Shown: one piece after another, positions 19,007-36,160 of the stretch
Numbering within the stretch: the first letter of the stretch is position 1
Layout: every line of letters starts with the position of its first letter
Virus record (IMG/VR): IMGVR_UViG_3300003322_000571
Location: 62,001-126,000 of that record
Direction: 5' to 3' (one strand)
DNA: 64,000 bases
Program-made: the position numbers and the translations under genes
Notes under the pieces: model-generated
Told to the model about the DNA's origin: nothing
Database searches by the model: none
The model's input: only the letters and a program-made list of their open reading frames with translations

Positions 19007-19014
19007 ATGCGTCC

Positions 19015-19021
19015 ATAAATA
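19015..19021 (+). promoter_or_regulatory. T4-type late promoter core ATAAATA (also at 20505, 23674, 32902, 33309, 34866 on +; 201-207, 27213-27220, 63542-63548 on -)
   Basis: Recurs at gene boundaries directly upstream of lysis, virion-type and HEG genes; resembles the T4 late consensus TATAAATA. Confidence 0.75.
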
Positions 19022-19026
19022 CAAAC

Positions 19027-19212
19027 ATGGATGCACAACAAAAACAAATCAAGCAGCTTGAAGCGCAAGTAGCGAAGCTAGAGAAGGCAGTCAACCTGCT
19101 ACTCAATCGCACACATCAACTCGATGTAGAAGTCCGTCGTTTGAAAGGTAACCACCTTCAAACTAAGCACCAGATTGCTGCTGTTGAACGGAATTTGCAC
19201 CGAGGAGAATAA
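19027..19212 (+). CDS. late coiled-coil protein
   Basis: Heptad pattern; first gene of the spanin operon. Confidence 0.7.
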   Translation: MDAQQKQIKQLEAQVAKLEKAVNLLLNRTHQLDVEVRRLKGNHLQTKHQIAAVERNLHRGE

Positions 19213-19213
19213 A

Positions 19214-19600
19214 ATGTGGCTCAAGTATAAACTGCAGATCATTTTGGCACTGGTCGTACTAGCGATCGGTGCTGGCGCTGCTTGGTATGTGGGAAATCTT
19301 CGCACGACGATTGCAGATCAAAAGAGCTCGATTGTCAAGTTGGAACTGGAAAACCAGATCATCAAAGACAATAACGCGAAGTTAGAAGCATCAATCCATG
19401 CGAACAACGAAGCTATCACTAAACTGGCTGCAGGATCAGACGCTACTGTTAAGGCGTTCAACAGTCTCAACGTTAACGTCAAAGGACAATTGACAGGTCT
19501 TGATTCTCGTCTACAGGGAATCTTGAAAGAGAAGAAGCCGCAGTCTTGCCAAGAGACAATTCAATACTTGCTTGATGCTGTACCGGAGTATAACAAATGA
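19214..19600 (+). CDS. inner-membrane spanin (Rz-like)
   Basis: N-terminal TM followed by coiled coil and a C-terminal Cys; adjacent lipoprotein. Confidence 0.75.
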   Translation: MWLKYKLQIILALVVLAIGAGAAWYVGNLRTTIADQKSSIVKLELENQIIKDNNAKLEASIHANNEAITKLAAGSDATVKAFNSLNVNVKGQLTGLDSRLQGILKEKKPQSCQETIQYLLDAVPEYNK

Positions 19601-19968
19601 AATTCGTAGTAGCAATTGTCGCTGCGCTAATTCTAGCTGGATGCTCCACACAAACGATCATTCAAAAAGAGATTGTCACTGTCGACAAACCGATTCCGTT
19701 TATTCCAAAGCCTCCTGAAGTACCCAAGTTTGTCTCCCAAGTAGACAAACTTACTGCTGCAGATGCATCAGATCCTGGGAAAGTGGGGCAAGCGTACAAG
19801 TACGATACGCTGATGCTCCGCAAGTTGATCGCTATATATGAGCAGATTCTTGCGCAGTATAGCGCGAGTTCGACAGATTTCGACAAGATCAAAGGCGAGA
19901 TTGACAAAATCTATGCTGATATTAATGCAGCAGAGACAAAAGCCGTTGATAATGCAGCGAAAAAGTGA
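19597..19968 (+). CDS. outer-membrane spanin lipoprotein (Rz1-like)
   Basis: Lipobox LAGC followed by a Pro-rich segment. Confidence 0.75.
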   Translation: MKFVVAIVAALILAGCSTQTIIQKEIVTVDKPIPFIPKPPEVPKFVSQVDKLTAADASDPGKVGQAYKYDTLMLRKLIAIYEQILAQYSASSTDFDKIKGEIDKIYADINAAETKAVDNAAKK

Positions 19969-20032
19969 TCCGTTGATTCTTATCTAAAAATGGGGTAAAG
20001 TAGGGCATCCGTTGTACCTGTAAGGAGGCCCT

Positions 20033-20494
20033 ATGTTTGGATGGTTGCGTCGTAGTACGGCGCCGAATCTACTCAATTTCGACCGTGCTGACGTCGAATT
20101 GTACGGGCAAGCTCCGAAACCGACCGGTGACATCAGTCCGTTCATCCGCGACACCGATGCTCTATGCGCAAAGTATGCGCAAGAGGCAAAACAGCACTTT
20201 GAAAACTTGCGTAATCAGGCTGAGGAGACTGTACTCCCAGGTCAGACTGTCGATCAACGGTTCAAAAACCTGATTGAGGATGATCAGATCGTCCGTGATC
20301 TCGTCGCAAGCATGGGCGAGATTGAACGTCGGCATGCGCTCGAGCACGAAGAGGTGATCGAAGCACTGAAGCAGATCTCCACTGAAGTTCGTCGTGGCGC
20401 AACTGCTGCCAATCTGATCGACTTCGCTCGTCAGCATCCGTTCCTCAGCGGAATGATCGGGACCCACATCCTGCACAAGATCGCTTCGAAGTAA
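20033..20494 (+). CDS. hypothetical protein
   Basis: AGGAGG SD. Confidence 0.75.
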   Translation: MFGWLRRSTAPNLLNFDRADVELYGQAPKPTGDISPFIRDTDALCAKYAQEAKQHFENLRNQAEETVLPGQTVDQRFKNLIEDDQIVRDLVASMGEIERRHALEHEEVIEALKQISTEVRRGATAANLIDFARQHPFLSGMIGTHILHKIASK

Positions 20495-20535
20495 TCTAGC
20501 GCTCATAAATACGCCATCTAAAAGGATGGCGGTTT

Positions 20536-20808
20536 ATGAGACTGGAACAATTGTTTGAGAGCGACATCACTGTTCTCAAGAAATACAAACAGCAACTATC
20601 TGATCAAGAGCGTCAGCAATGTCTCGACGCTGACGCTGTTTGGCACCATGGCCCAGGCGGGAAGCCTTCGCCAGCTGTGTGGAAGTCTGTAAATCCAAAA
20701 ACGAAGAAGGTAACGTACGTGACTAACACTCACCGTGCGTACAACACTGCTTCTACGTTGGCTGGTGCGATTGACCGCTATCACAAATTCATTAAGGATA
20801 CGGCATGA
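20536..20808 (+). CDS. late protein with a capsid-targeting-like N-terminus
   Basis: MRLEQLFES behind ATAAATA. Confidence 0.7.
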
Positions 20809-21578
20809 GCGGACCAGGACCAATCAATCAATTCGCTAAGTCTGCTGGGGAGATGAACATTCCTAGCCAGTACGATAACAAAGACTTCGGTAAGAAGGTT
20901 AAAGCCGTTGCCAAGAAAGTGACGATTAAGTCATCCGGTGACGGTAAAGTATATGGCGCACGCGCTATCATGACAAAAGAGACACAATCGTTCCTTCAGT
21001 TCCTCGAACAGAAGATCCTCGCTGAGAAGGAGGAGACAAGTGATCAAATCGTTACCGAAGGTGATGATATCACATTGTTGCCTGATTCTGTTTTGGGTGA
21101 GATCAAATCGAATATCCGTGCTGGCGCAAGGGATCTAGAACAGAAGTGGAAGAACGCATTGGAACTCGTTCACAAGGCTTACCAAGTTGCCAACATTCGT
21201 CGTCCAACTCCGGATCAAAAAGGTGCTTGGAAACAGTACGAAGATATGATCAAGTTTGGCGTCGCACAGTTGCGTGCTACACGTGGCATTGACGGTGATT
21301 GGCGTATGACGCAAATTTCGATTCGTGAAGCGTACGAACAAGAGCCAGACAAGACGCAAAAGCTCGGTAAGCGTAGGTTCTTTGTTGAAGTGCCCGGCGA
21401 AGCTGCTGTTGAAGCTGACGGCAAGGACGTTGGTGAAATTATCGAGCAACTGACAAACAAATTCCGCCGACACGGTACAACAGTTCGCGTTGACCGTAGG
21501 GATGACCTCGGTGCTGTTCTATCAATTTGGAAGCACGGCATTCAGATTGACAAAATGGTTATCAAAGAGTTGTCGTAA
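20805..21578 (+). CDS. late hypothetical protein, probable head component
   Basis: Internal FLE/LAE/VTE sites; terminator at 21596-21631. Confidence 0.7.
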
Positions 21579-21673
21579 CCGTTTTACACCTCACCAAAAA
21601 GCCTGCAACAGTTGAATGTTGCAGGCTTTTTGTTTAATATGTACATAACACTATAACTAGAAGGGTATACCCA

Positions 21674-22531
21674 ATGTCAAATTCCAAGTACGTGAAGCAT
21701 CCGTCGTTTTGCTACATTGCACCGACTTCACACTTGCAAGATGTCCTCGCATCCAAGACTCATCTCGTCCTTGCTCACCTCGTAGACGAGGATGAAACGT
21801 ACGCTGATTTCTACCATGATCTAGGCACAGCAAGCGGTGACTTCATCATGATGGACAACTCAGCTTACGAATTGAAGGTTCCGTACGCACCAACGAAGCT
21901 GATCGAACTTGCGTCGAAGTGTGCTGCAGATGTTGTCGTTCTCCCTGACTATCCATTCCAACCAGCCTCTGTTACAATCGAAGCTGCAAAAGAGTTCATT
22001 CCTCAGTTTAAGGAAGTCGGTCTCGGAACATTCTTCGTCCCTCAATCGAAGAAAGGTGATCTAGAAGACTGGATTCAAGCGTATATCTGGGCTGCAGAGA
22101 ATCCTGATATCGATGTGATCGGTATGTCAATTCTTGGTATTCCAAATGCCCTGTCAAACATCGATCCAGCTTATGCACGTGTCGTGATGACACAGTTGCT
22201 GATTGATCGTGGCGTGTTTAATTTTGATAAGCACCACCACTATCTTGGCTTGAACGCTGGCCCTGCTCTTGAGATTCCTTCGCTGCTGCGAATGAATGCT
22301 CTTGACACAATTGATAGCTCTGGTCCAATCTGGTCTGCTATTCTCGGTCATGAGTACACTATCAACGCCGACAGCTATCTTGCAACGAGTAAGCCAAAGA
22401 TGCCTGTCAATTTCCATATCAAGGAATCACGTGATGCTGCGACGATTACTCGTATTAACCACAACATCACTTTGACGCAAAGTTTGTTTGCAGGCGCTAA
22501 CGACGTCAAAACATGGTACGCACAGGAGTAA
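21674..22531 (+). CDS. TGT-fold protein, putative DNA/tRNA guanine transglycosylase (DpdA-like)
   Basis: MMDNSAYE, VLPD, HYLG, DTIDSS in TGT motif order; queE and queD in the same window. Confidence 0.6.
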   Translation: MSNSKYVKHPSFCYIAPTSHLQDVLASKTHLVLAHLVDEDETYADFYHDLGTASGDFIMMDNSAYELKVPYAPTKLIELASKCAADVVVLPDYPFQPASVTIEAAKEFIPQFKEVGLGTFFVPQSKKGDLEDWIQAYIWAAENPDIDVIGMSILGIPNALSNIDPAYARVVMTQLLIDRGVFNFDKHHHYLGLNAGPALEIPSLLRMNALDTIDSSGPIWSAILGHEYTINADSYLATSKPKMPVNFHIKESRDAATITRINHNITLTQSLFAGANDVKTWYAQE

Positions 22532-22535
22532 TACG

Positions 22536-23192
22536 ATGGGCACAATGACACAAGAAAACCGTGAAGTTGTTGCCCGTGCTCTTCGTGTCAATTACGGACT
22601 CGTCGTTCATTGTTACAAGTTTAACAAGGAAACGATGGACACGATCCGTGAGATGGTTTCTGTTGGACAAAAGCCATACGATCCGAAGAACGCTGACTTT
22701 GTTGGTGACACACTAGATCGACATCCTTGGAGCTGTTATGGCAATAACCAAGAGATCGTTGCTGCGATGACTTTAGTTCATCATGAGAGTGTGTGGCCAG
22801 AACATGTCAATTTCGCTCGTTCGAAGTTCGATCAGAATACGAAGAAAGTTGACCTCAATATCAACGGACGATCGTTTCAAGTAAAGACCGCCAAACGTGG
22901 TGCTCAGCATTGGTTCGTTCCAGAGAACGATCTGATCGGTGAAGCAGATATGATGCTTGTCGTAGATGCTGCACGTGGACTGATGTATGAATTTGATCGT
23001 GCTCCTTTCAGACGCAACATGAAAGAGCAAATGGATATTGGTGGTCCGTATGATCAATGGCGAGGTGAGCAAGGTTGGTTCGTCGATACCAGCGAAATTG
23101 ATTTTGTCACCACCTATACGATTCCTGCAGGTGTTGCGATGACTTACCTTGAAGGTGACATAATGGTTTATAATGACGGGCTGAAACTATGA
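22536..23192 (+). CDS. putative PD-(D/E)XK nuclease
   Basis: KKVDLNINGRSFQVKT motif. Confidence 0.45.
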   Translation: MGTMTQENREVVARALRVNYGLVVHCYKFNKETMDTIREMVSVGQKPYDPKNADFVGDTLDRHPWSCYGNNQEIVAAMTLVHHESVWPEHVNFARSKFDQNTKKVDLNINGRSFQVKTAKRGAQHWFVPENDLIGEADMMLVVDAARGLMYEFDRAPFRRNMKEQMDIGGPYDQWRGEQGWFVDTSEIDFVTTYTIPAGVAMTYLEGDIMVYNDGLKL

Positions 23193-23677
23193 AGAACAAA
23201 TCAACACGAATCATGAGGCAAATGGTAGTCGATCAGATTACTAAGGGCCGTGCAGAGTATCAAGCAGGTGGAGATCCACATATCGAAGTGTTTGGACCGG
23301 ACGGCAAGTCTGGTTATATCAACTTGCTTAACGAACAACAATCGCTCCCTCAACTTGACAACCAGTTCAATACTCTACCAACGAGCTGCTACGGTAGTGT
23401 GTTGTCGTTTGAAGAAGTTGTTGACATTGTCAAAGCGGAACGTCAATACCAAGCATCGAAGTATAATGAACAACCGCAATCACTTCCCGGCTTTTTGCTG
23501 ATTCTCCAAAAGGAGATTGAAGAAGCAATTGACGGATGGATGAAGGGAGTTAATACTGGCAGGGATTCACCGTTGAATGAAGTGGTTCAGATTGCTGCAA
23601 CCGCTGTTGCATGTATTGAACGTTACGGTGCAACAGGTATCACAACGAACACGAACGACGAGCCGCAGTATCGATAA
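23189..23677 (+). CDS. MazG-like helical NTP pyrophosphatase domain (C-terminal)
   Basis: AERQYQ..KY.EQ, ILQKEIEEA, EVVQIAATAVACIE. Confidence 0.55.
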   Translation: MKNKSTRIMRQMVVDQITKGRAEYQAGGDPHIEVFGPDGKSGYINLLNEQQSLPQLDNQFNTLPTSCYGSVLSFEEVVDIVKAERQYQASKYNEQPQSLPGFLLILQKEIEEAIDGWMKGVNTGRDSPLNEVVQIAATAVACIERYGATGITTNTNDEPQYR

Positions 23678-23703
23678 ATACCGGACTTTCCGGATTTATC
23701 AAC

Positions 23704-24351
23704 ATGAAACTGCACGAAATCGTTACTGAACAAGAACTCATCTCTGAAGTCAACTGGCGTTCAGCACTAGCTGCTGGTACAATCGCAGCTAGTGCTATGG
23801 CACCTAGTCATTTGACTGCAAATAAAGCACCTGACCATTCGCCAGCACAAGTTGCTGCGATGCAGAAGCTATACCATAACCAGGGTATTGATCAACTGTC
23901 TCGTATTATTCAAAAGAAGTACAAGGGAGTTGATGATCAAACTGCTCGTCAGATTGCTGATCTAGCACAGAAACATGCTAAGCCAGGTTTCCCACGAGCA
24001 GTTGATATCTTGTCGGTTATTGGTATTGAGAGTTCGTTTAGGCCAACAGCGGTTTCACAATTGAAGAATGATCCTGCGCGTGGACTTATGCAAATGCGTC
24101 CAGGCGTTTGGGGTTTAAAGAAGTCTGACCTTGCTACAATCGAAAAGCAGATTGAGCGAGGTGCAGACGTTCTGCATCAGTACTACGAAAAGCTTGGTAG
24201 TGCTAAAGATGCTCTCCATGCGTACAACATCGGTATCACAAACCTTCGTAAGAACAAGGGACTGAATCCAAAGTACGTAGATAAGTTCCGTAAAGAACGA
24301 GAACAGTACGACACATTTTCCCCGTCATACGCATCAGTTGACCCCGTATAA
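23704..24351 (+). CDS. lytic transglycosylase (SLT), late, probably virion-packaged
   Basis: IESSF, ARGLMQ, ALHAYNIG; N-terminus MKLHEIVTE. Confidence 0.88.
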   Translation: MKLHEIVTEQELISEVNWRSALAAGTIAASAMAPSHLTANKAPDHSPAQVAAMQKLYHNQGIDQLSRIIQKKYKGVDDQTARQIADLAQKHAKPGFPRAVDILSVIGIESSFRPTAVSQLKNDPARGLMQMRPGVWGLKKSDLATIEKQIERGADVLHQYYEKLGSAKDALHAYNIGITNLRKNKGLNPKYVDKFRKEREQYDTFSPSYASVDPV

Positions 24352-24401
24352 CACAACGCGTATACTGACGGCATAACTATAACAATAAGGAGAACACGTA
24401 G

Positions 24402-24974
24402 ATGTTCATCAATCCTAGAACAGCAATTGCTGAAGGCTGGGTTACTTTTCCTGCATGGATGACGGAAGAGCAGAAAGAAAAGTGCATTCAGCCGAACGCA
24501 CTTGATTTTACGTTGGACCACGTTAACGCTATTAGGACAGACGTTCCGTTTATCCTGTATGAAGACAAGTCAAAAGTCCAGCACCGTAGGTTGATCGAAG
24601 TCGCACCTTCGAACGGCGTATTCCATCTTGTCAATCAGTTTGAATCGCCTCTGTGGGGTGGCTACTTCAACACGACAAAGTACGATTTTCAGTCTGACTT
24701 CTATGTCAACTTGCCGGAGGGCGTTGCTGCACTTGTTATTGTTCGCTCAACGTTGAACCGTAACGGCCTGTTTATTACAACGGGTCTTTGGGATTCTGGT
24801 TTCAAAGGTCATATCGCCGGTGTTCTTCACAATACCGATGGTGAAGCTCATATCGAAGAGCACGTCCGTATTGGACAAATCATGTTCATCAAGTCAGAAT
24901 TCAGTGGAGCTCTGTACGCTGGTGGATACAACACTGAAGCAGGCCAACATTGGACCACAAGGAGTACACAATGA
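24402..24974 (+). CDS. trimeric dUTPase / dCTP deaminase family protein
   Basis: QPNALD, RSTLNRNG, WDSGFKG, RIGQIMF. Confidence 0.85.
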   Translation: MFINPRTAIAEGWVTFPAWMTEEQKEKCIQPNALDFTLDHVNAIRTDVPFILYEDKSKVQHRRLIEVAPSNGVFHLVNQFESPLWGGYFNTTKYDFQSDFYVNLPEGVAALVIVRSTLNRNGLFITTGLWDSGFKGHIAGVLHNTDGEAHIEEHVRIGQIMFIKSEFSGALYAGGYNTEAGQHWTTRSTQ

Positions 24975-25195
24975 GTGACGAACTAAAACGAATCGAACAA
25001 CTAGAACAAGCTGTTGTTCAGCTGACGAAGCAAGTAAACTACATGGCACTTCAACTTGGATTCATTCAAGTTGCACCCGCTGCCACGGCCGCTGGTGAAG
25101 GTGTTGCTGGCCAACGTCAAATCGCTGGTAATCCGAACCGTACTGAAACAGGAATGGGCCCTCTACTCAATCCAACCGGATCGCAGTACCTGTAA
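24971..25195 (+). CDS. hypothetical protein
   Basis: AAGGAG SD; ATGA overlap. Confidence 0.7.
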   Translation: MSDELKRIEQLEQAVVQLTKQVNYMALQLGFIQVAPAATAAGEGVAGQRQIAGNPNRTETGMGPLLNPTGSQYL

Positions 25196-25387
25196 TCTCT
25201 AGTTGATCAACTAAGCTAAAGGGGTGATAGTGAAAACGTCACCTCTTTTTCTTTTGTTGGTTATCTTTGGAGAACCAGGTATGATGATAACACTTCAATA
25301 CTTCCTTGAAAACGCCGTCGCGAAGATGTTCTACGACGACACGGTCGAAACAAGGATGTCCTATAACAAGAAAAACAAGGATACCAA

Positions 25388-26005
25388 ATGTCAAAACCAC
25401 GGGGCTACATTGAACGCGTTCTGTTCATTGACGCTGAAACATCTGGGATTGCGCTCGGCAGTGCAGACCCCTCCTACGATGAAGCGTCCGGTAAGGAATA
25501 TCAAGCTGTCTCATGGGGGTTGGTTGTAGCCGACGCTCAGACGTTGAAGCCACTCGACAAACTGTATGTCGAGATCAAATACAACGGAACAGCAGAATGG
25601 TCAAAGGAAGCTCAAAAAGTCCACGGCCTTTCGCTAGCATACCTTGAAGAAAATGGCGTTGATGAAGAAGACGCCGTTGTTCAAATCGCCGAACTAATCC
25701 TCAAGCACTGGGGCCACGACGGTGTCGTTTGTGTTGGTGGTCATAACGTTGCGACGTTTGATCTGCCATTCTTCCGTCGACTGCTTAACAAATTTGACAT
25801 CAATGTCAAGTTCGGCAGCAAGACGATTGACACGAACGCAATTGGTTTCGCAACTTTCGGCACTCACAATAGTGACGACTTGTTCGAAATGGTAGGATTG
25901 CCACCTCGCGATCCTGCAGGACATAATGCACTAGACGATGCTGATCGTGCTCGTCAAGCAGTAATGTATGTCCGTAAGCTGTTCAAACACTGCGTGGACG
26001 GCTAA
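25388..26005 (+). CDS. DEDDh 3'-5' exonuclease (DnaQ/RNase T-like)
   Basis: IDAETSG, GHNVATFD, IDT, HNALDDA. Confidence 0.9.
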   Translation: MSKPRGYIERVLFIDAETSGIALGSADPSYDEASGKEYQAVSWGLVVADAQTLKPLDKLYVEIKYNGTAEWSKEAQKVHGLSLAYLEENGVDEEDAVVQIAELILKHWGHDGVVCVGGHNVATFDLPFFRRLLNKFDINVKFGSKTIDTNAIGFATFGTHNSDDLFEMVGLPPRDPAGHNALDDADRARQAVMYVRKLFKHCVDG

Positions 26006-26006
26006 T

Positions 26007-27195: not shown

Positions 27196-27246
27196 GGTTA
27201 GTACCTCTCTATTATTTATAGAAAGCTACTATCCGTACGAAAACAC

Positions 27247-27477: not shown

Positions 27478-29174
27478 ATTATCGCCTGCGATGAACCCAC
27501 CAAACAAAGATTACATGGTTGAATTACAATTGCGTATTGCACAGCAAAACATGAACGATGCGTTTGCTAAACGTGTCTTGGAAATGGCATGTGAGTATGG
27601 TTGGTCAGGCGATCTTGTTGAGATCGAATGGTTCGTCAAGTGGATCCACGATAAGTTGGATGTCCCATACGATCCTACGCCCATTCAAAACGTTGAGTGT
27701 TAATCTCTAATCAGTTGATTTAATCTATCGGGTCAAATATAGTGAAGGTGAAATAACTTTTCAGTGTGTTTAATGGTAGAAGATAACCACCTGATCGACA
27801 TGGACGACTTTGAAGTACAGCAAGTTGCTTACTTCAATGGTCTCCTTGCTGCTGAGCAGTACATGAACGAGGTCAACAATGGCTATATCCAAACTTTGGA
27901 TTTGACAGAAGCTATTGCTGATCTCGTTCATCGGGAAGACATTTTCTTTGCTCCTCTGGTCAGTCTTTCGAACCGTACTGACCACTGAAAATGGATTGAC
28001 CCGTAAAAAGGGTTAATTGAAGATATATTGAACCGTTGGGTTAAAGTTTGAGGAGTACTTTATGAGTAAGGTTGTGATGTCGTGGGGTGATCGGTTTGCT
28101 GTTATCGATCACTATCGCCCGACCGATGAAAAGATTTGCCAGGTGTTCGGCCTTGACGCCGGAGAGCTGGAGATGGCACGGATGATGTTGAAGACCGGCA
28201 CGTTCAAGGTCAACAAGTCACTCGATGTGTCGAAATACAGTTCACTGTTCAGCGACAACAGCGAAGTGCAAGTGATCACCGCTGTCACGCCAGGTGCAAT
28301 TTCGAAAAAGGGCAGTGCAACGACGCACACAATGCCTGAATCCGCATCGAAGCGCGTTCGTCCTCCGCAGAAGCGCGGCCGTAAGGGTGACAAGATCAGT
28401 CGTGCACTGCAATCAGTGACGACGACGAAGGTTCCAGTCGAGGAGTTCTGCAAGCAACACGATGTTTCGCTCGCCGTTCTGCGTCAGTCGAAGCGGTTCA
28501 TCGAGAAGCTGCCTCCTGATGTGCAAGCAACGATCGGTAAGATCAATGTTCGCCAAGACGGTTCGAAGGTTCTGATGATCTGGAAGGACTGACATGGGAA
28601 TGTCAACTCGTGTTCACGGACTCGTGCCACCTGATGCAAAGTACTTAGCAAAGCTTGATGCTTACCTTGCGTGCGAGCGAGCAGGTGTTAGCATTCCTGT
28701 TGAACTGATGGATTTCTTCGAGGGACGTCCTAACGCTGACGGGATGGCAATCAGCATCAAAGATGCTGTGTCTGAGTTTTCTGACAGTAATACAGCTACG
28801 GATGGGTGGATCGTTGATCTGTCGAAGCTTGATCCAAAGGTCAAAAAGATTCGTTTCGTCAACAGCTACTGATTATGAGCGGATTCAAGATTGTTGACAT
28901 TCACATCGTTGGTGAAGGTGCTGATGTGATCTTCCAAGATGACAATGCTACGGAACTCTTCACAGGGAAGTCGTTCCGGCGTATGCCAAACGGAAAGTTA
29001 GCGTTAGCACATCAACCATACGGTCTCGGTTCAGCGGCCGAGCGAGCTTTCGGTGCAGATTACAAGAATGCACGACACGTGGTCGATGATCCACGTGATT
29101 TCCGGAAGGAGGCGTTCATGCCATCCAAGGCAAGAATCGTTTGGACCAAGAAAGTAAAAGCTCTCGCCCCTTGA
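27452..29174 (+). CDS. five hypothetical ORFs (27452-27703, 27764-27988, 28062-28592 basic/DNA-binding-like, 28594-28872, 28875-29174)
   Basis: Tightly packed + strand ORFs with SDs; terminator at 29192-29227. Confidence 0.65.
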
Positions 29175-29289
29175 AGGGTTGGTGCATAAGTAAAAAGGCG
29201 TTCCCAAAAGGAGCGCCTTTTCTTTTTGCACAATTGAAAGTATACTCTGTTAAGACCGTTAGTTTGGTCTTTCAGTGTAAACGGCTTTT

Positions 29290-29898
29290 ATGGCGACCGA
29301 ACAACAACTAAAAACGCTAGACAAGTACGTTGACGCTATCCACGAACTGCTGATTGACCAGATCGAAGGGATCAAAACTAATCCCAAGCGTCAACTGCTA
29401 CAGAACAGGTTAATCTTCACACGGATGCTCGGGCAGATGTTATACGATGCGCCGAAGCTACACACCGGCATGGTTAGCGTCCGCATGGTTGAACAGAAGT
29501 TGAAGAACTTCAGTGCGAAGGCGTGTCAAGAACATCACCACACAAGACAAAAGGGCGGATCAGCGTTAATAGCGCTGGTCGACCGCGCTATTGCCAGTGG
29601 TGTTTATCCGTCTAAAGACCAGGTGCGACAACTTGCCTTGAAGTATTGCCAAGTTCACTACACAACTGTTGCTGAGAACAACAAGCTTCGAAAGCATCAA
29701 AAGCATTGTTCCAGTGAAGCAGCGTATAGACGAGCTAATATCCAATTGGTACACGCCCCAGATCTGTTTACCAAACGAGGTAAGCATGCAGAGGTTTGGA
29801 AACAAGAAATGCGTGACAAATATCAGCCAGTGGTTGACTCGTACCACAAGCCACAACCAATACAACAGAACTTTGAATGGCCAGATATCATTCACTAA
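29290..29898 (+). CDS. hypothetical protein, possible His-Me nuclease-like
   Basis: EHH...T..EN..L pattern; weak. Confidence 0.4.
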   Translation: MATEQQLKTLDKYVDAIHELLIDQIEGIKTNPKRQLLQNRLIFTRMLGQMLYDAPKLHTGMVSVRMVEQKLKNFSAKACQEHHHTRQKGGSALIALVDRAIASGVYPSKDQVRQLALKYCQVHYTTVAENNKLRKHQKHCSSEAAYRRANIQLVHAPDLFTKRGKHAEVWKQEMRDKYQPVVDSYHKPQPIQQNFEWPDIIH

Positions 29899-30614
29899 TG
29901 ACTTATATTGTATACCAGTTAACCTCTCCCTCAGGTAAAAAGTATTTCGGACTATCTAGTAAGACATTATCTGTCCGCGTTTCAACTCACATGAAAGATC
30001 GTCAGCGATTAATCAATAGAGGAAAGCATCTACCCAGGCTATATGCTGCCTTCGGTAAGTATCCTATTGATCTCTGGAAGCAAACTGTTCTGTTTGAGGG
30101 GTTGACGAGATCCGAGGCTGAAGTTAAGGAACGGGAATTAATAGCAATCCACAATACACAAAACCCTTCGTGTGGATACAATATGGCTGAAGGTGGGATA
30201 GGAGGGGATACTGGCCGCAATGGAGAACTTGACAAAAGGCAAAAGCATTCTGAGCGAATGAAAGCTCTCAACGCAGATCCTCTATTCGTCAAGAATCGCA
30301 TTGAAAAGGGACAAACCTCTATACGCAACAATCCCGAACAGTTCCGGGTCAATGCAATTAAGAGGAAAATGAGGCTTCGAAGATCCTCAAATCATCAAAA
30401 TCACACAGGCATGTGGGTGGTTCGAGGAGTACCGTACGGTAGTCTACGTGAAGCAGTGGCATCTACGGGCGTAAGTGAAAGCACGATTGTAAAGTTTTGC
30501 AATAAACCCGATGTTGTAGCAGGATGTACAAACAAGTATATCAAGATCGGAACAACGCCTAGAGAAAATGGCTACTACAAAACAATAAAGGAAAAAGATA
30601 ATGGCAAAGTATGA
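29898..30614 (+). mobile_element. GIY-YIG (Seg-like) homing endonuclease
   Basis: YIVYQLTSPSGKKYFGLS, R...H, KYP, E...I, GYNMAEGG; C-terminal NUMOD/HTH-like segment; overlaps the queE start. Confidence 0.82.
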
Positions 30615-31497
30615 ATGGTCTGAAGTATTCTACTCAATTGAAGGTGAAGCGAAGTATTCCGGACATCCGACTGTATATGCACGTTTCGCATTGTGCAATT
30701 TTCAGTGCAAGGGGTTTGGTAATCCTGAAAAATTAGACACCACAAAAATTGATGTTCTTGGTTTCAATCCAGCAGATTACAAAGACATCTATTCAATTCC
30801 ATTGATTACCCGCGGTTGTGATTCAATCTATTCGTGGGACAAAAAGTTCGCTCACATGTGGAAGAAGACAGATGAGCACGAATTGGCAAATGAACTACTA
30901 AAGCTTTTGCCGAACCAGTCGTTTACAACTCCGTCCGGACGTTCGGTTATTTTGTCGTTGACCGGTGGAGAACCAACACTTCGTGCAAAATTCATCCCCA
31001 CGTTGATGAATACGCCGGAGTTGAAAGACGTCAAGCACATCTTGATCGAAACAAATTGTGCAGTTCCCCTGAAGCATGATTTCATTATGGAAATCAATGC
31101 GTGGCTCGCAGCTGACCCATCTCGTAAATGGACGTGGAGCAACTCGCCCAAGTTGTCGGCGTCGGGAGAAAAGTGGGAAGAGGCAATTCGTCCTGAGATC
31201 GCTGTAATGCAAACTCTCGTCAAGAGTCGTGAATTCATTACGAATCAAGTCGATCAATACTTCAAATTTGTGTGCGATGAAACTGATGAAATGTTCGACG
31301 AAGTAGCGAAGGCTATGGAAGAATACTACACAGCAGGTATCCCGCGTGATGTTGAAGTATATGTAATGCCTGTTGCTTGCCAAGAATCGGATCAAACGCG
31401 AATCTCTTCAAAGGTGGCAAAGCAGTGCATGGATCGCGGATATATCTACTGCCATCGTGTACACTTGGATGTGTTTGGTAACACTCCCGGAACTTAA
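30601..31497 (+). CDS. queE: 7-carboxy-7-deazaguanine synthase (radical SAM)
   Basis: EVFYSIEGE, RFALCNFQC...GCDS, TGGEP, IETN, SPKL, RVH..VFG. Confidence 0.88.
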   Translation: MAKYEWSEVFYSIEGEAKYSGHPTVYARFALCNFQCKGFGNPEKLDTTKIDVLGFNPADYKDIYSIPLITRGCDSIYSWDKKFAHMWKKTDEHELANELLKLLPNQSFTTPSGRSVILSLTGGEPTLRAKFIPTLMNTPELKDVKHILIETNCAVPLKHDFIMEINAWLAADPSRKWTWSNSPKLSASGEKWEEAIRPEIAVMQTLVKSREFITNQVDQYFKFVCDETDEMFDEVAKAMEEYYTAGIPRDVEVYVMPVACQESDQTRISSKVAKQCMDRGYIYCHRVHLDVFGNTPGT

Positions 31498-31538
31498 TAC
31501 ATTGGCGGCTTGTCCGCCTATTTTCATAGGGAAAAGAA

Positions 31539-32393
31539 ATGACACTTTATCGTTTAACGCCAGAAAATGGTTTACCGGTTTCTATCGTGCTCGAACATGT
31601 TGTTGCTGTGACTGATATCAAAACTTCACGTTACAACGCCAGTTTCACAGTTCATATGTCAAACGGAATTCAATACGTCATCAATGAGCCAGTTGGTAGT
31701 ATTACATATCTGCCGGGATTCACGGTTGACTACTTTGAGACTCAGGAATATAAAGATGCTGAAAACCAAGTAACTGAAACTGCAAAGAATCGTCTCATGC
31801 CGCGTCGCAGTGATTTGATTAATGCCCTCTCACCTCGGAGTTATTAAGTCCTATGAATACTTACAGTGTTGCCCTTATTAGCGATCAAGTCTCTTTCAAG
31901 ACGGAAATCCAAGCCGAAACATACGGCGATGTCTCGTTGTCTAATGGTGGAAAAAGGTACCTGTTCATCAGTAACGGTACTACCGTCGCAGTTATCGAAA
32001 AGCCGCCGGGACATTCAATTATCATTAACAAGCTGTGAGAAGTAAATGCGGCCATATCATATTAACGCGGAAGGCGTAGCGAACGGAAAGGCGTGGATCG
32101 ACCTCGACCACATCCAGATGATCTCAGATGTGGTCGTTGACAACAGAACAGAATTCGGAACAGCAACAGCTTCGTTTTATGTCGTACTGGCGTTCCGTGA
32201 GAACGGGATCAGTTTTTCTGTATATGGTGAGCGACGGTACAACAGCGACAAGTCGAACGCATTCGCAAATGTGTTCGATAACCATCCTCTTACAGAAACC
32301 GACATTGCTAAAATCAATCAAGTCCACGATCAACTTGTCGCTGCGTGGCAGAACAAGCCGAAGGCAGGAACAAACAGCACCGGACCTTGTTGA
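31539..32393 (+). CDS. three small hypothetical ORFs (31539-31847, 31853-32038, 32046-32393); first and third look paralogous
   Basis: Shared I.L.H...(V/I).D.....ASF.V pattern. Confidence 0.65.
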
Positions 32394-32460
32394 AGCGAAG
32401 TCCCACGTCGTTGAGGTCTTCTGAAACCACATATATACTCTTACAAGATTGGGAGTTTAT

Positions 32461-32895
32461 ATGCTGCACGACAAGAAATTGATCTACAGGGCGGGCGTCG
32501 TCCCGTACATTGTCGAGGACGGCCAAATTCGTATGAAGTTCATGCGCCCATCAGACCCAGAGTTTGGTGGTGACACATTCCAGCTTGCTAAAGGCAAGAT
32601 TGAAGAAGGTGAGTCGGCTGAACAAGCAGGCTTGCGTGAAGCAAAGGAAGAACTTGGTTTGTTCATTGGAAACGTCGCACTGGTAGAAGAACTGGGGACG
32701 TTCATGGGTCGTACAACGGTGTTCGTTGCAAAGGTAAAGGAACGTGATATGTTCGGAGAGCCTGGATTCGAGACATCAGAAGTTGCTTGGATGACGGTGG
32801 AAGAGTTTAATGCTCAAGGGCGTGATCTCCATAAGCCTGTCGTTAAGGCTGCTCACCGCAAAATCTGCAAGCTAGAAGGGTTGTCGGTTAACTGA
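32461..32895 (+). CDS. Nudix hydrolase
   Basis: Nudix box GKIEEGESAEQAGLREAKEELG. Confidence 0.92.
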   Translation: MLHDKKLIYRAGVVPYIVEDGQIRMKFMRPSDPEFGGDTFQLAKGKIEEGESAEQAGLREAKEELGLFIGNVALVEELGTFMGRTTVFVAKVKERDMFGEPGFETSEVAWMTVEEFNAQGRDLHKPVVKAAHRKICKLEGLSVN

Positions 32896-32934
32896 TAACC
32901 GATAAATACCTGACAACTCTTTACGAGGCACAAC

Positions 32935-33309
32935 ATGAAAGTTAGAGATCTATTTGAACGCCGTGGCCCAAGCCACGGTAACGTTCCAGTTAAATTCATC
33001 TGGACGTTGGAATGGCAAGACGATGCAGGTGAATGGCAATCGGATGACGTTACTGTAACAGGGACTGTATCTTACGACGATGATCCGTACGGAGTAGGCG
33101 AGCGCCTGGGCTCTCGTGATTTTGAATTTTTCCCTAAAGCTGTTATCTCAGGTAACACAAAACAACCGATCGATATTAACTCGATTTCTGAAGAAGAATG
33201 GGCTAAGATCGAAGAATATGCGCTTGAAAAAGCGCATGACGAACTGGAATCACAGCAAGCAGAGTATGATGACTGGGCACGAGAAGAGCAGCGACTCGAG
33301 CGGTTCTAA
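32935..33309 (+). CDS. late acidic protein with a capsid-targeting-like N-terminus
   Basis: MKVRDLFER behind ATAAATA. Confidence 0.7.
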   Translation: MKVRDLFERRGPSHGNVPVKFIWTLEWQDDAGEWQSDDVTVTGTVSYDDDPYGVGERLGSRDFEFFPKAVISGNTKQPIDINSISEEEWAKIEEYALEKAHDELESQQAEYDDWAREEQRLERF

Positions 33310-33344
33310 TAAATAAGATCATTACTCTTACAGGGAGAAACAGA

Positions 33345-34145
33345 ATGAGTGATTGGAATCTAGACCGCCTGCGTAAGATCGCTGGTCTGAACGAGTCTGT
33401 AGTTTCGAAGAAAAAGCAACTCAACGAAGGTTGGGCTGACGATGATGATGGCTATGATGACGAAGATCCAGACGTGAAGATCGCTAGCGAAGACAAGGGT
33501 CAGCGTAAGTTCGAAAGGAAGAACAAGAAAGAGTTGTCGACTGCGGACAAGGAAGCAGCTGCTAAGGCCGCTGAAGCTAAGAAGAAGCAAGCTGAAAAGA
33601 AGGCTGCAGCTCCGAAGGCAGAAGAGAAGAAGCCAGAACCTAAGAAGGAAGAACCTGCTAAGGCTGAAGAGAAGAAAGAAGCTCCAGTCGAGAAGAAAGA
33701 AGAGCCAGCAAAGGACGAAGTGAAGGCTGAAGCTGAAAAGAAGCGCCGCGGTAAGGCTCCTAACCCAGAGAGCAAGGCACAACGTGCTCTCGCTGTGTTG
33801 AAGAACATGACACGTGGTGAATTCATCAAGTGGGCTGAAGCTAACACGGGTATGGGTAAGAATTACGCTAGCGCGTACTACGCAAAGCACAATCCAAAGA
33901 GCTCTCGTCAAGTTAAGGAAGCAGCAACACTGTTCGGTATTGCTCACCCGTTCTTGAAGGGATTTGTACTTGCAGAGAACCGTGAACTGAACCAGATGCA
34001 ATGGATCGATGCAGACAGCAAGTTGGAACCGATGTTGTTCACAGAACAAGCAGAAGCTGACAAGATTGCTAAGTACATGGCAGAATGGAAGTCTCAGACA
34101 GCTGTAGTTGAAACATTCGACATGGCAGAATTTGACAAAGAGTAA
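33345..34145 (+). CDS. late K/E/A-rich protein, probable head/scaffold component
   Basis: LRKIAGLNES and QLNEG sites; ATAAATA promoter; terminator at 34165-34195. Confidence 0.7.
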   Translation: MSDWNLDRLRKIAGLNESVVSKKKQLNEGWADDDDGYDDEDPDVKIASEDKGQRKFERKNKKELSTADKEAAAKAAEAKKKQAEKKAAAPKAEEKKPEPKKEEPAKAEEKKEAPVEKKEEPAKDEVKAEAEKKRRGKAPNPESKAQRALAVLKNMTRGEFIKWAEANTGMGKNYASAYYAKHNPKSSRQVKEAATLFGIAHPFLKGFVLAENRELNQMQWIDADSKLEPMLFTEQAEADKIAKYMAEWKSQTAVVETFDMAEFDKE

Positions 34146-34275
34146 TAGTCGTTATTACACAAACAAAAGGGAGACTTTGTCTCCCTTTTTCTTTTGCTAT
34201 ATACTGTATGCATGTGGTCTCTGCAGCTCACCCCACACGAATCCTCTGCGCTGCTAATAACAACAAGGAGGCCAC

Positions 34276-34854
34276 ATGGCTGTAATCAAATCACAAAAAT
34301 CATTCCACAAACTTCCGTGCGCTCATGCTCAATTCCAGGACTTCGATGGTCCTTGCAAGACATTCCACGGATATGACCGTAGTGTCTCATTCGAATTCTC
34401 GGGAGAGATTGACGAATATGGTTGGCTAGTTGGGTTCGGACATCTGAAACCAGTTCGCGCATTCCTCGAATACTACTTCGACCACACTGCTGTCGCACCC
34501 GCAAACGATCCTCGCCTTGCGGAGATCATCAAGGCAGAAGAAGCTGGACTATTCACTCTTCGTGTATTGCCTTACGGTGTTTCTATGGAGATGTCGGCAT
34601 TGTTCATCTGGGAACAAGTCAACCCGTTCATCCACAAGATTACAGACGGTCGGGCTTGGATTTCTCGTATCGAATGTCGAGAGCAAGATTCCAACGCAGC
34701 TTCTATTGAAGTGCCAACACGTTCATACCGTATGAAGCATGAAATGGAAGTGAAAGCTAAGCAGGGAGAATATCTGACGCTCAACCCACGTTGGGATTAC
34801 AAGAAGCCGCAAGACGTGTTGTATAGAATTGGTGTGCTGAACAGCGCTAACTAA
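34276..34854 (+). CDS. queD: 6-carboxytetrahydropterin synthase
   Basis: CAHAQ...CKTFHGY, GWLVGFG.LK, FDHT, SME, RE.DSN.A. Confidence 0.85.
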   Translation: MAVIKSQKSFHKLPCAHAQFQDFDGPCKTFHGYDRSVSFEFSGEIDEYGWLVGFGHLKPVRAFLEYYFDHTAVAPANDPRLAEIIKAEEAGLFTLRVLPYGVSMEMSALFIWEQVNPFIHKITDGRAWISRIECREQDSNAASIEVPTRSYRMKHEMEVKAKQGEYLTLNPRWDYKKPQDVLYRIGVLNSAN

Positions 34855-34900
34855 TTAATCGAGACATAAATACCGCACAATTCCAGATTGGAGCGAATTT

Positions 34901-36160
34901 ATGTCATTCAACATGATTAAGGAAGCCCAAGCGCGCCTTGCGCTTGGGAATAAACTGTCAGTCGCAGAACACGTTCAGAAGGTTCTCGGCGACGTGACAT
35001 TGTCAGAAGTAAAGAGCATCGTTGAATCGTTTAACAAGGCCGACTTCCAAATTACACCAGAAGACTATAGTCGTTGGTTGGAAGTCGTTGTTGAGCTGAT
35101 GCAACAACACGGCGGGAGCCGTAAGCGTGACTTCATGGACATTGCACTAGACGTTGTTCTCGACAACGATCCAAAGTTTGATCTACTTGGTGGCGATCAA
35201 GAAGCATTGAAAGCACAAGTTGCAAACACTTTGTGGCAGACATACAAGGCTTCGAAGGCACACTCCGAAGTCGCCGGTAATGTCAATTCAACAATTCAAC
35301 AAGCGCGCGAAGAAGAGGAAGCAATTGCTGACTTGATGTCAGTATGCGACGACAACGAGCGTGAAGAGGAAGAGTCTGGCGGTGGGTTTGAGCAAGCCCT
35401 TAAGACTACGATGAATATCGATTCTGCTCAAGAAGAAGAGCACGATGGCAATCCTTATCCTGTAGGAACAATGCGTCATGCACTGTGGAAGGATGTCAAC
35501 AAGAGCAAGATGTTTAAGTCCGGCCACAACATTGTCAAGAAAGCAAAGGAAGAAGAGGAATTCGACGATATCGAACTCGATGACGATATCGATATCGATA
35601 CTACTCAGATGTCTGCCGAAGACTTGGCCTCTCGTATTGTTGGTAAGGCAGGTATCGACGATTACGAGACATCTGATACTGGTGATCAGACAGATGTCGA
35701 AGCTCGTATCGAAGACCTTGAAGCACGTATTAAGGAACTCGAATGTGACGCTGATGCGGACACAGAAGAAATCGACAGCGATACGCTAGACATCGATTAC
35801 GATAGTCTCGGCAATGATCGTCCAGGTGCTGCACAAGTGATCGGTGTTTCTATTCCAGCTTCTGGTAAGGAAGACGAACGTTTCCGCGATAAGCCAGACT
35901 TCGACGACGAAGAGTCAACAAAGAAGTTCTTCCGTACTGCTTTGACATCTCCTAAGGAAATGATGTCTCAAGCAATCAAGGACATTGAAGCAGAAGGGGC
36001 AGAAGCTTGGAAGAAGTTGCAGTTCCCAAAGAATCCACATCCTAAGAAGTCACAGGCTTTCAGGGCGTGGGAAAAGGGAATGAAGAACGCCGCAAAGGAT
36101 CACCTTGGATTCAAGGACAAGCCGGTGCAAATTACTAGTAAACCTGCCCGTAAAAAGTAA
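34901..36160 (+). CDS. late, highly acidic protein (repeated EEE), probable head/scaffold component
   Basis: ATAAATA promoter; repeated xxEEE(E) segments. Confidence 0.7.
   Translation: MSFNMIKEAQARLALGNKLSVAEHVQKVLGDVTLSEVKSIVESFNKADFQITPEDYSRWLEVVVELMQQHGGSRKRDFMDIALDVVLDNDPKFDLLGGDQEALKAQVANTLWQTYKASKAHSEVAGNVNSTIQQAREEEEAIADLMSVCDDNEREEEESGGGFEQALKTTMNIDSAQEEEHDGNPYPVGTMRHALWKDVNKSKMFKSGHNIVKKAKEEEEFDDIELDDDIDIDTTQMSAEDLASRIVGKAGIDDYETSDTGDQTDVEARIEDLEARIKELECDADADTEEIDSDTLDIDYDSLGNDRPGAAQVIGVSIPASGKEDERFRDKPDFDDEESTKKFFRTALTSPKEMMSQAIKDIEAEGAEAWKKLQFPKNPHPKKSQAFRAWEKGMKNAAKDHLGFKDKPVQITSKPARKK

What the first reader, a model, noticed from the sequence alone, without database searches (positions are those of the whole stretch)
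19008..34905. Systematic hairpin lock on late genes embedded in early regions
Seen: at most ATAAATA promoters, sequence at or just around the promoter is complementary to the SD/AUG of the downstream gene. Examples: TGCGTCCAT(19008-19016)/ATGGATGCA(19027-19035); CGCCATC/GATGGCG over the SD at 20512-20531; GATAAAT-A-CCGGA/TCCGG-ATTTATC at 23673-23700; GACATAAAT/ATTTATGTC plus inner CGC..TCCA/TGGA..GCG at 34863-34905; CTTTCTAT/ATAGAGAG for the minus-strand HEG near 27205-27225. Established: T4 uses this arrangement for e, soc, 49 and I-TevI, where read-through early RNA is silenced and late-initiated RNA lacks the 5' arm. Inference: here it is a general design rule, with the promoter itself often encoding the anti-SD/anti-AUG strand.
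Basis: partly seen in the sequence, partly recalled or inferred. Interest (0 to 1): 0.6.

Follow-up and report, generated by a model that had tools for sequence, protein, structure and literature searches.

The report
Late-promoter hairpins that hide start sites

Summary
All five quoted hairpins are at the stated coordinates and fold far better than shuffles (z -3.8 to -7.3, 0/200). ATAAATA is a genuine late-promoter motif. It occurs 63 times in the 350-kb genome, almost always 12-45 nt before an SD+ATG. It precedes the portal, adaptor, sheath, tube and fibre genes, is kept before orthologues in XacN1 and Xoo-sp13, and the phage encodes a gp55-like late sigma factor.

Genome-wide (50 promoter-gene pairs), opening the ribosome site costs 9.5 kcal/mol in RNA that reads through from upstream. 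It costs 3.6 kcal/mol in RNA starting 6 nt after the motif. The difference is 5.9, against 2.4 for swapped promoter/gene pairs (z 13.7) and 2.3 for 374 non-promoter genes. Twenty of 50 promoters carry a gene-specific lock (2.5 expected). The same pipeline gives z 1.8 for T4, 7.4 for XacN1 and 2.4 for Xoo-sp13.

The mechanism matches T4 e/I-TevI, and the locked genes include an SLT muramidase and a GIY-YIG homing endonuclease. "Most promoters" is really about 40-50%. "Embedded in early regions" is not shown, because locks are as frequent downstream of other late promoters. No RNA data or covariation could be obtained. Verdict: a new member of a known kind, used at unusual scale.

The parts
19008..19035 (+). 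Hairpin of 9 bp (one G-U). The 5' arm at 19008-19016 overlaps the start of promoter ATAAATA (19015-19021). The 3' arm at 19027-19035 is the ATG plus two codons of a 61-aa ORF (19027-19212). The ATG lies only 5 nt after the motif and has no SD, so the predicted late start falls on the A of ATG (leaderless candidate).
   Evidence: -11.1 kcal/mol, z -3.8, 0/200 shuffles
20502..20540 (+). Hairpin of 17 bp. The 5' arm (20502-20519) contains promoter ATAAATA (20505-20511). The 3' arm (20524-20540) contains SD GGAUGG and the AUG (20536-20538) of a 90-aa gene (20536-20808).
   Evidence: -22.9 kcal/mol, z -7.3; dG_open 20.6 long vs 4.1 short, 0% of swaps reach it
23673..23700 (+). Hairpin of 12 bp. The 5' arm contains promoter ATAAATA (23674-23680) plus CCGGA and also the stop codon of the upstream ORF. 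The 3' arm covers the weak SD (GGA) and ends 3 nt before the AUG (23704) of an SLT lytic transglycosylase gene (23704-24351).
   Evidence: -13.3, z -5.2; dG_open 15.2 vs 2.6; PF01464 E 1.7e-11
27199..27231 (-). Hairpin of 13 bp on the minus strand. Promoter ATAAATA (27219-27213) spans the end of the 5' arm and the loop. The 3' arm AUAGAGAG (27212-27205) covers the SD of a GIY-YIG/NUMOD1 homing endonuclease gene (27195-26437).
   Evidence: -14.3, z -4.8; dG_open 14.1 vs 2.3; Pfam/PHROG hits
34863..34905 (+). Hairpin with a 9-bp outer stem, GACAUAAAU (promoter 34866-34872) against AUUUAUGUC (AUG 34901-34903), plus inner stems over the SD GGAG. The gene is 34901-36160 (419 aa, no family hit).
   Evidence: -15.0, z -4.6; dG_open 15.4 vs 5.9
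32902..32908 (+). ATAAATA promoter before gene 32935-33309 with no lock (S 1.3). A hairpin encloses the promoter but does not reach the SD/AUG.
33309..33315 (+). ATAAATA promoter before gene 33345-34145 with no lock (S -0.3).
201..207 (-). ATAAATA promoter before a 217-aa minus-strand gene. S is 8.9 but not gene-specific (16% of swaps reach it) and the local fold is no better than shuffles.
63542..63548 (-). ATAAATA 60 nt before the tail-fibre-like gene 63481-62042 (Peptidase_S74). It lies outside the 12-45 nt class, and the fold is not significant (z -1.3).
12447..12453 (+). ATAAATA copy with no ORF start downstream (inside the end of gene 11225-12517). Probably not a gene promoter.

Best explanation
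ATAAATA (usually C/G-ATAAATA-C/T) is the late promoter of this T4-superfamily jumbo phage and is read by its gp55-like sigma factor. At about 40% of these promoters, the promoter and the 10-18 nt around it form the 5' arm of an RNA hairpin. The 3' arm of that hairpin is the Shine-Dalgarno sequence and/or the AUG of the gene that follows.

Any RNA that enters from upstream contains both arms, so the ribosome site is closed. RNA that starts at the gene's own promoter, about 6 nt after the motif, lacks the 5' arm and is open. Translation of these genes is therefore tied to initiation at their own late promoter.

Shown: the motif, its gene association, the hairpins, their specificity and their position.
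Inferred: the start position (from the T4 rule), the existence of read-through RNA, and the effect on translation.
For: Promoter identity:
- 63 copies genome-wide, 58 followed by an ORF start, mostly 15-35 nt away.
- It stands before the portal, adaptor, sheath, tube and fibre genes.
- It is retained before orthologues in XacN1 and Xoo-sp13 at about 37% protein identity.
- The phage has a gp55 homologue (E 7e-8 to T4 gp55; phrog_234 E 9e-30).

Lock:
- dG_open of the SD-AUG window is 9.5 kcal/mol in long RNA and 3.6 in short RNA.
- The excess is 5.93, against 2.39+-0.26 for swapped pairs (z 13.7, 0/20000) and 2.27 for 374 non-promoter genes (Mann-Whitney U (MWU) test p 1e-8).
- 20/50 locks are gene-specific.
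- The result is robust to start offset, flank length and window.

Position:
- Truncation scan: the cost is flat for 5' ends at or upstream of -18 and falls to baseline by +6 relative to the motif end, so the 5' arms lie over the promoter.
- The 3' partners peak from -10 to +3 around the AUG.
- Short RNAs are, if anything, less structured than control leaders (3.6 vs 4.2).
- The window around the promoter alone is not more structured than control upstream windows, so the signal is specifically promoter-to-RBS pairing.

Positive control: the same pipeline recovers T4 e (S 12-15), I-TevII (12.9) and gene 26 (9.1).

Gene classes match T4: an SLT muramidase, a GIY-YIG endonuclease and a second endonuclease (phrog_681/HNH, T5orf172 Pfam hit).

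The six promoters in back-to-back divergent pairs, where no read-through can enter, all have S below 4.

T4 literature:
- The late promoter box lies at the -10 position and its first base is numbered -13 (PMC2988020), which puts it at -13..-6.
- Mechanism for e, I-TevI/II/III, segB, mobE, soc, 25 and 26: PMC3014915, PMC2988022.
Against: - No transcript start, RNA level or translation datum exists for this phage.
- Locks are not conserved at orthologous genes in XacN1 or Xoo-sp13 (adaptor S 13.4 against 1.0 and 1.0).
- No diverged relative was found for covariation. The one near-identical strain shows no change in the only hairpin it covers.
- Sense and antisense strands fold equally well, so the strand that matters is not shown.
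- Association with read-through opportunity is only a trend (6.66 vs 4.51, p 0.085).
- Upstream ORFs stop 2-9 nt before or inside the 5' arm at the four plus-strand window sites. Terminating ribosomes could therefore open the hairpin.
- The homing endonuclease lock at 27199-27231 is on the strand opposite to its neighbours, where the source of read-through RNA is unclear.
Confidence: 0.65

Rival explanations
1. The hairpins are weak intrinsic, partly bidirectional terminators. The A-rich promoter and the U-rich RUUUAU flank a GC stem. Read-through RNA would be terminated just before the AUG, or antisense RNA would be terminated by stem+UAUUUAU. RNA started inside the hairpin escapes termination.
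For: - The scan tool calls the inner stems at 20512-20531 and 23681-23693 terminator-like on the minus strand, with TATTTAT (the promoter's complement) as the tail.
- About half of the specific locks have a self-contained stem starting 1-2 nt after the motif and followed by RUUUAU.
Against: - Sense tails carry only about 4 U in 8, and they are paired in the MFE.
- The phage's clear terminators have at least 6 U in 8 (for example UUCUUUUG) and sit upstream of promoters as separate elements.
- About half of the locks have the 5' arm upstream of the motif and a 3' arm that ends in or beyond the AUG, with no U tract (264238, 290447, 7364, 24431, 283422, window 19008 and 27199).
- The signal is pairing to the SD-AUG window, not structure around the promoter.
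Confidence: 0.12
2. The hairpins are translational-coupling devices. Ribosomes finishing the upstream ORF melt the 5' arm and so switch on the downstream gene on polycistronic RNA. The promoter overlap would be incidental.
For: At the four plus-strand window sites the upstream stop codon lies 2-9 nt before the 5' arm or inside it: 19004-19006, 20492-20494, 23675-23677 and 34852-34854.
Against: - Strong RBS-closing structures are 4-5 times rarer at non-promoter gene junctions (S>=8 in 7-10% against 36%).
- The arm position tracks the motif.
- In T4 e, a similarly placed hairpin reduces lysozyme synthesis about 100-fold (PMC3014915), with the upstream ORF nudE ending 37 nt before e.
Confidence: 0.08
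3. The signal is a DNA-level palindrome (cruciform, or a site for a dimeric protein or nuclease) at late promoters, and RNA folding is a by-product.
For: - Sense and antisense strands fold equally well.
- G-U pairs are only 11% of the cross pairs.
Against: - The arms differ in sequence, length and spacing at every site, so there is no common protein site.
- The promoter-centred window is not more structured than controls.
- Partners centre on the SD/AUG at variable distance from the motif (loops of 3 to about 45 nt).
Confidence: 0.04
4. The hairpins are chance complementarity in short AT-rich leaders.
For: - Individual 7-9 bp matches are common. 28% of swapped pairs reach 7 bp when G-U is allowed.
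- The site at window 201-207 is not specific.
Against: - z 13.7 against swapped pairs, 0/20000 permutations.
- 20 specific locks against 2.5 expected.
- Watson-Crick-only helices of at least 7 bp in 14/50 against 6.1%.
- Each quoted hairpin beats 200/200 shuffles.
Confidence: 0.01

Closest known systems
T4 gene e (lysozyme) late-promoter / translation-initiation-region hairpin
   Same: A late TATAAATA-type promoter lies in the DNA that encodes the 5' strand of a hairpin closing the ribosome site. Long RNA is closed and late RNA is open (PMC3014915). The same pipeline scores T4 e at S 12-15 and the SLT muramidase gene here at 12.6.
   Different: - The enzyme here is an SLT transglycosylase, not a T4-type lysozyme.
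- The promoter is C/G-ATAAATA rather than TATAAATA.
- Nothing is measured here.
- In T4 this is one of a handful of cases (genome z 1.8), whereas here 20/50 promoters carry it.
Hairpin-regulated homing endonucleases of T-even phages (I-TevI, I-TevII, I-TevIII, segB, Aeh1 mobE)
   Same: A GIY-YIG/NUMOD1 endonuclease (window 26437-27195) and a second endonuclease (phrog_681/HNH, T5orf172 Pfam hit; genome 224374-225129) each have a late promoter inside a hairpin that covers the SD (PMC2988022).
   Different: - The window endonuclease is free-standing and antisense to its neighbours, so the source of read-through RNA is unclear.
- No operator or autorepression site was looked for.
T4 soc, 49, 25 and 26 RBS-sequestering structures
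   Same: These are late genes on long polycistronic RNAs whose RBS is closed by upstream sequence (PMC2988022). Gene 26 is picked up by the pipeline (S 9.1).
   Different: Here the same design extends to large virion genes (982-aa adaptor, 608- and 795-aa fibre-like proteins, a 3239-aa protein). It also occurs downstream of other late promoters.
PeSL (promoter-early stem-loop) cassettes of T4-type phages (recalled from memory, not checked in a paper)
   Same: A promoter is combined with a stem-loop at gene boundaries.
   Different: - PeSLs are repeated, near-identical cassettes with early promoters.
- The late-promoter hairpins here all differ in sequence.
- A PeSL-like repeated family does exist elsewhere in this genome, at 147-160 kb.

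Membership tests
T4-type late-promoter / RBS-sequestering hairpin (e, soc, 49, I-TevI class) | A gp55-type late promoter (TATAAATA-like box, no -35 element) immediately upstream of the gene | tested here: met
   - ATAAATA is enriched (10 vs 3.2 in the window).
- 58/63 copies precede an ORF start.
- It stands before virion genes and is conserved before orthologues.
- A gp55 homologue is present.
T4-type late-promoter / RBS-sequestering hairpin (e, soc, 49, I-TevI class) | In RNA extending from upstream, a stable structure pairs the SD and/or AUG | tested here: met
   This was tested in silico only. dG_open is 9.5 against 3.6 kcal/mol, 20/50 locks are gene-specific, and the five quoted hairpins have z -3.8 to -7.3.
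T4-type late-promoter / RBS-sequestering hairpin (e, soc, 49, I-TevI class) | The late transcript starts inside or after the 5' arm and so cannot form the structure | tested here: inconclusive
   - The geometry fits if the start is about 6 nt after the box, as in T4 (PMC2988020).
- The truncation scan reaches baseline at +6, and several loops begin exactly at +6.
- No 5' ends are mapped.
T4-type late-promoter / RBS-sequestering hairpin (e, soc, 49, I-TevI class) | The gene is also carried on longer RNAs from upstream (early or middle) promoters | not testable with these tools
   - No RNA run holds the phage.
- Proxies give only a trend (p 0.085).
- Sigma-70-like sites are not enriched.
T4-type late-promoter / RBS-sequestering hairpin (e, soc, 49, I-TevI class) | The structure lowers translation of the long RNA | not testable with these tools
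   This needs toeprinting, reporter or in-vitro translation experiments.
Intrinsic (rho-independent) terminator | A GC-rich stem-loop directly followed by an unpaired U-rich tract | tested here: not met
   - Sense-strand tails have about 4 U in 8 and are paired with the promoter.
- None of the lock hairpins in 17000-36999 is called on the sense strand, and two are called on the antisense strand only.
- Canonical terminators of this genome have at least 6 U in 8.
PeSL-type mobile promoter/stem-loop cassette | Repeated, near-identical cassette sequence at many gene boundaries | tested here: not met
   The arms differ at every late promoter. The repeated GGGAGTAT.ATACTCCC family belongs to sigma-70-like promoters at 147-160 kb.

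The most novel reading that the evidence does not exclude
In this phage the promoter/RBS hairpin is not only an early-versus-late timer. It is a genome-wide insulation rule. About 40% of late genes, including major virion genes lying downstream of other late promoters, would be translatable only from RNA started at their own promoter. Protein output would then be set promoter by promoter and shielded from any read-through. One gene (19027) may even be made from a leaderless late RNA that begins at its AUG.
Probability: 0.3. Interest if true: 0.6.

Novelty: new member of a known kind. Interest (0 to 1): 0.45.

Why it matters
The T4 e/I-TevI hairpin is a textbook curiosity known from about a dozen genes. 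Here the same design is statistically demonstrable as a genome-scale feature of a distant, uncultivated jumbo phage. It is weaker but present in the cultivable relative XacN1.

If confirmed, two things follow. Late-promoter positions and RBS accessibility could be read together to predict which transcripts are translatable. Operon-style read-through in such phages would be largely silent for many genes. The result also supplies a simple, portable statistic (cognate against swapped promoter/leader pairs) for screening other phage genomes.

Tried and rejected
- **Close relatives for covariation.** The 419-aa protein, the SLT protein and the major capsid protein searched against viral contigs, and the SLT protein against metagenome contigs, gave no relatives. 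Megablast and tblastn against 'phages' found only distant jumbo phages.
- **RNA evidence.** No RNA run holds the phage. A 98-99% identical strain in one soil sample covers only one hairpin, without changes.
- **Strand test.** Sense and antisense fold equally well, so this cannot separate RNA-level from DNA-level selection.
- **Conservation of locks at orthologous genes in XacN1 and Xoo-sp13.** The promoters are conserved but the locks are not.
- **'Early region' test.** Sigma-70-like promoter scans show no enrichment: 27 vs 25 expected, and 5 vs 6 for the strict pattern.
- **Link between locks and read-through opportunity.** There is only a trend (p 0.085), and no difference between late and other upstream contexts.
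- **General promoter-centred palindrome.** Rejected, because the promoter window is no more structured than control windows.
- **Repeated mobile cassette.** Rejected, because the arms are all different.
- **gp45 homologue.** T4 gp45 gave no hit in a simple search, which is uninformative.


Full report
**What the window is.** The window is bases 62001-126000 of a single 350,089-bp virus record with direct terminal repeats and 48% G+C. It encodes a Gp23-type major capsid protein. The genome also encodes a portal, a 982-aa head-tail adaptor, a sheath, a tube and fibres, and a gp55-like late sigma factor (E 7e-8 to T4 gp55; phrog_234 E 9e-30). The nearest sequenced phages are the Xanthomonas and Stenotrophomonas jumbo phages Xoo-sp13, XacN1, CM1 and RAS14, at only about 37% protein identity. 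The DNA was found in a root metagenome, and a 98-99% identical strain occurs in one soil sample. No RNA run holds it.

**The observation.** All five quoted complementarities are at the stated coordinates. Folded alone, each beats 200 of 200 dinucleotide shuffles:

| Site | Strand | MFE (kcal/mol) | z |
|---|---|---|---|
| 19008-19035 | + | -11.1 | -3.8 |
| 20502-20540 | + | -22.9 | -7.3 |
| 23673-23700 | + | -13.3 | -5.2 |
| 34863-34905 | + | -15.0 | -4.6 |
| 27199-27231 | - | -14.3 | -4.8 |

Outside the CGCCAUC/GAUGGCG stem, CUCAUAAAU pairs with GUUUAUGAG, so the promoter core pairs with the start codon. Within the reported range, 5 of 7 ATAAATA copies carry such a hairpin. The copies at 32902 and 33309 do not.

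**Is ATAAATA a promoter?**
- It occurs 10 times in the window against 3.2 expected and 63 times in the genome.
- 58 copies are followed by the start of an ORF of at least 40 aa, mostly 15-35 nt away and with an SD.
- It stands before the portal, adaptor, sheath, tube and fibre genes.
- It is kept about 22 nt before the orthologous adaptor gene, and before several other orthologues, in XacN1 and Xoo-sp13.
- With the gp55 homologue, this makes it a T4-type late promoter, although the base before it is mostly C or G rather than T.
- In T4 the box lies at the -10 position and its first base is numbered -13 (PMC2988020). That puts the box at -13..-6, so I placed the start 6 nt after the last A. Positions +6 to +8 are A-rich and G-poor.

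**Genome-wide test.** I used the 50 promoters whose gene start lies 12-45 nt downstream. For each I computed the free energy needed to keep the window AUG-14..AUG+2 unpaired. This was done for a long RNA (50 nt upstream of the predicted start, to AUG+20) and for a short RNA that begins at the predicted start.
- The means are 9.51 and 3.58 kcal/mol, a difference S of 5.93.
- Joining each promoter region to the leader of another promoter's gene gives 2.39 +- 0.26 (z 13.7; none of 20,000 derangements reaches the observed mean).
- 374 genes without the motif, cut at matched pseudo-starts, give 2.27. S of at least 8 occurs in 36% of promoters against 7% of these controls (Mann-Whitney p 1e-8).
- 20 of 50 promoters have an S that at most 5% of swaps reach (2.5 expected, p 1e-13), and 24 of 50 at the 10% level.
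- The result holds for starts at +4 to +8, flanks of 30-80 nt, and other window sizes (cognate 5.1-6.4 against 1.8-2.7). It also holds for a model-free count: Watson-Crick helices of at least 7 bp occur in 14/50 cognate pairs against 6.1% of swapped pairs.

**Where the arms are.**
- A truncation scan shows the opening cost is flat (8.1-8.7) for 5' ends at -18 or further upstream of the motif end. It falls to 3.5 by +6.
- In MFE structures the 5' partners lie from about -18 to +5, most densely at +1 to +4. The 3' partners peak from -10 to +3 around the AUG.
- In several cases the loop begins exactly at +6: window 23674, and genome 60422 and 294431.
- The promoter core is often itself an arm. 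AUAAAU pairs with [AG]UUUAU placed just before the AUG or next to the SD. [AG]TTTAT occurs in 7/50 leaders against 7/374 controls (p 4e-4).
- Other locks use CCUC-type anti-SD sequence directly after the motif, or an arm upstream of it (genome 264238, 290447, 7364).
- The region around the promoter alone (motif -34 to +13) is not more structured than control upstream windows. The excess is therefore specifically promoter-to-RBS pairing and not a general palindrome at promoters.

**Controls in other genomes, same pipeline.**

| Genome | Cognate S | Swapped S | z | Specific locks |
|---|---|---|---|---|
| This phage | 5.93 | 2.39 | 13.7 | 20/50 |
| XacN1 | 4.35 | 2.18 | 7.4 | 11/42 |
| Xoo-sp13 | 2.77 | 2.17 | 2.4 | 7/47 |
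| T4 (24 exact TATAAATA sites) | 4.41 | 3.18 | 1.8 | 5/24 sites (4 genes) |

In T4 the pipeline recovers e (S 12-15), I-TevII (12.9) and gene 26 (9.1), but soc only weakly (3.5). So the method finds the classical cases, T4 uses the device sparingly, and this phage uses it most of the four.

**Mechanism.** The arrangement is that of T4 e, I-TevI/II/III, segB, Aeh1 mobE, soc, 25 and 26. In those genes, RNA from upstream promoters forms a structure over the ribosome site, and RNA from the late promoter inside that structure does not (PMC3014915, PMC2988022). The locked genes here include the same functional classes:
- an SLT lytic transglycosylase (23704-24351; PF01464);
- a GIY-YIG/NUMOD1 homing endonuclease (26437-27195, minus strand);
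- a second endonuclease with phrog_681/HNH matches and a T5orf172 Pfam hit, at genome 224374-225129.

I therefore take a translational lock released by promoter-proximal initiation as the most likely function (0.65). The start site, the read-through RNA and the translational effect are all inferred.

'Late genes embedded in early regions' is not shown.
- Locks are as frequent where the nearest upstream same-strand promoter is itself late with no terminator between (4/11) as elsewhere (16/39). The gene at 20536 is one such case: it lies 1.5 kb downstream of the 19015 promoter.
- Locks sit on the adaptor, two fibre-like proteins and a 3239-aa protein.
- Sigma-70-like promoters are not enriched in the window.
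- The link with read-through opportunity is a trend only. With a same-strand upstream gene and no terminator, S is 6.66; with a divergent or terminated upstream context it is 4.51 (p 0.085).
- The six promoters in three back-to-back divergent pairs, where nothing can read in, all have S below 4.
- The device may therefore insulate genes from any upstream transcription rather than only time them.

**Weak points.**
- No diverged relative was found, so there is no covariation test.
- Orthologous genes in XacN1 and Xoo-sp13 keep the promoter but not the lock, so the locks are evolutionarily labile.
- Sense and antisense strands fold equally well.
- Upstream ORFs end 2-9 nt before, or inside, the 5' arms of the four plus-strand window sites, so terminating ribosomes may open them (coupling rival).
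- The scan tool reads two inner stems as minus-strand terminators, with the promoter's complement as the U tract.
- On the sense strand the tails are U-poor and paired, unlike this genome's clear terminators.

**Verdict.** The T4-like mechanism is the best explanation and the scale is unusual.

Noticed in passing
outside the window: G000:C1:147080-158290: At least 12 near-identical cassettes of the form GTTGAC-N17-[TGGGAGTA-TWAT-ACTCCCA]. Each is a sigma-70-like promoter whose -10 hexamer sits at the centre of a perfect palindrome, followed about 15 nt later by GGAG and ATG. It resembles T4-type promoter-early stem-loop (PeSL) cassettes, a comparison made from memory.
   Followed up: partly
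window 19015-19029 (also genome 47017): The ATG of the 61-aa ORF lies 5 nt after ATAAATA and has no SD, so the predicted late start (+6) is the A of the ATG. This makes it a candidate leaderless late mRNA, and in longer RNA the same ATG is in a 9-bp hairpin. A second case with 6-nt spacing is at genome 47017.
   Followed up: partly
window 20512-20531 and 23681-23693, minus strand: Read on the opposite strand, the inner stems are followed by TATTTAT (the promoter's complement), and the scan calls them terminator-like. The late promoter could therefore double as the U tract of an antisense terminator.
   Followed up: partly
genome-wide, positions +1/+2 after ATAAATA: C is strongly preferred at +1 and +2 (24 and 25 of 58), and the base before the motif is C or G (43 of 58). 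In T4 the first base is T, and the segment after the box is AT-rich (PMC2988020).
   Followed up: partly
window 1535-3250: A 571-aa protein with TROVE (Ro60-like) and VWA domains lies just upstream of the major capsid gene (3814-5136). An RNA ligase with a PHA02142 OB fold is at 6642-7790.
   Followed up: no
outside the window: G000:C1:134359-134969: A cluster of CCCTATAGGG-type palindromes in a non-coding stretch.
   Followed up: no
window 21595-21632, 29193-21 and 34165-34189: Strong A-tract/stem/U-tract terminators at 21595-21632, 29193-29221 and 34165-34189; the last is called on both strands. They divide the plus-strand gene array into units, and they are distinct in form from the promoter hairpins.
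   Followed up: no
window 19843-24662 (scattered contigs): A 98-99% identical strain is present at low depth in four runs of one 2024 soil sample. The differences are mostly transitions in coding sequence, and there are none in the one hairpin covered (20502-20540).
   Followed up: yes
genome 224374-225129 (L009:4377-5129, minus strand): A second homing-endonuclease-like gene (phrog_681/HNH, T5orf172) lies in the tail gene cluster. It has its own ATAAATA and a CCUC/GAGG lock (S 7.7, 2% of swaps reach it).
   Followed up: partly
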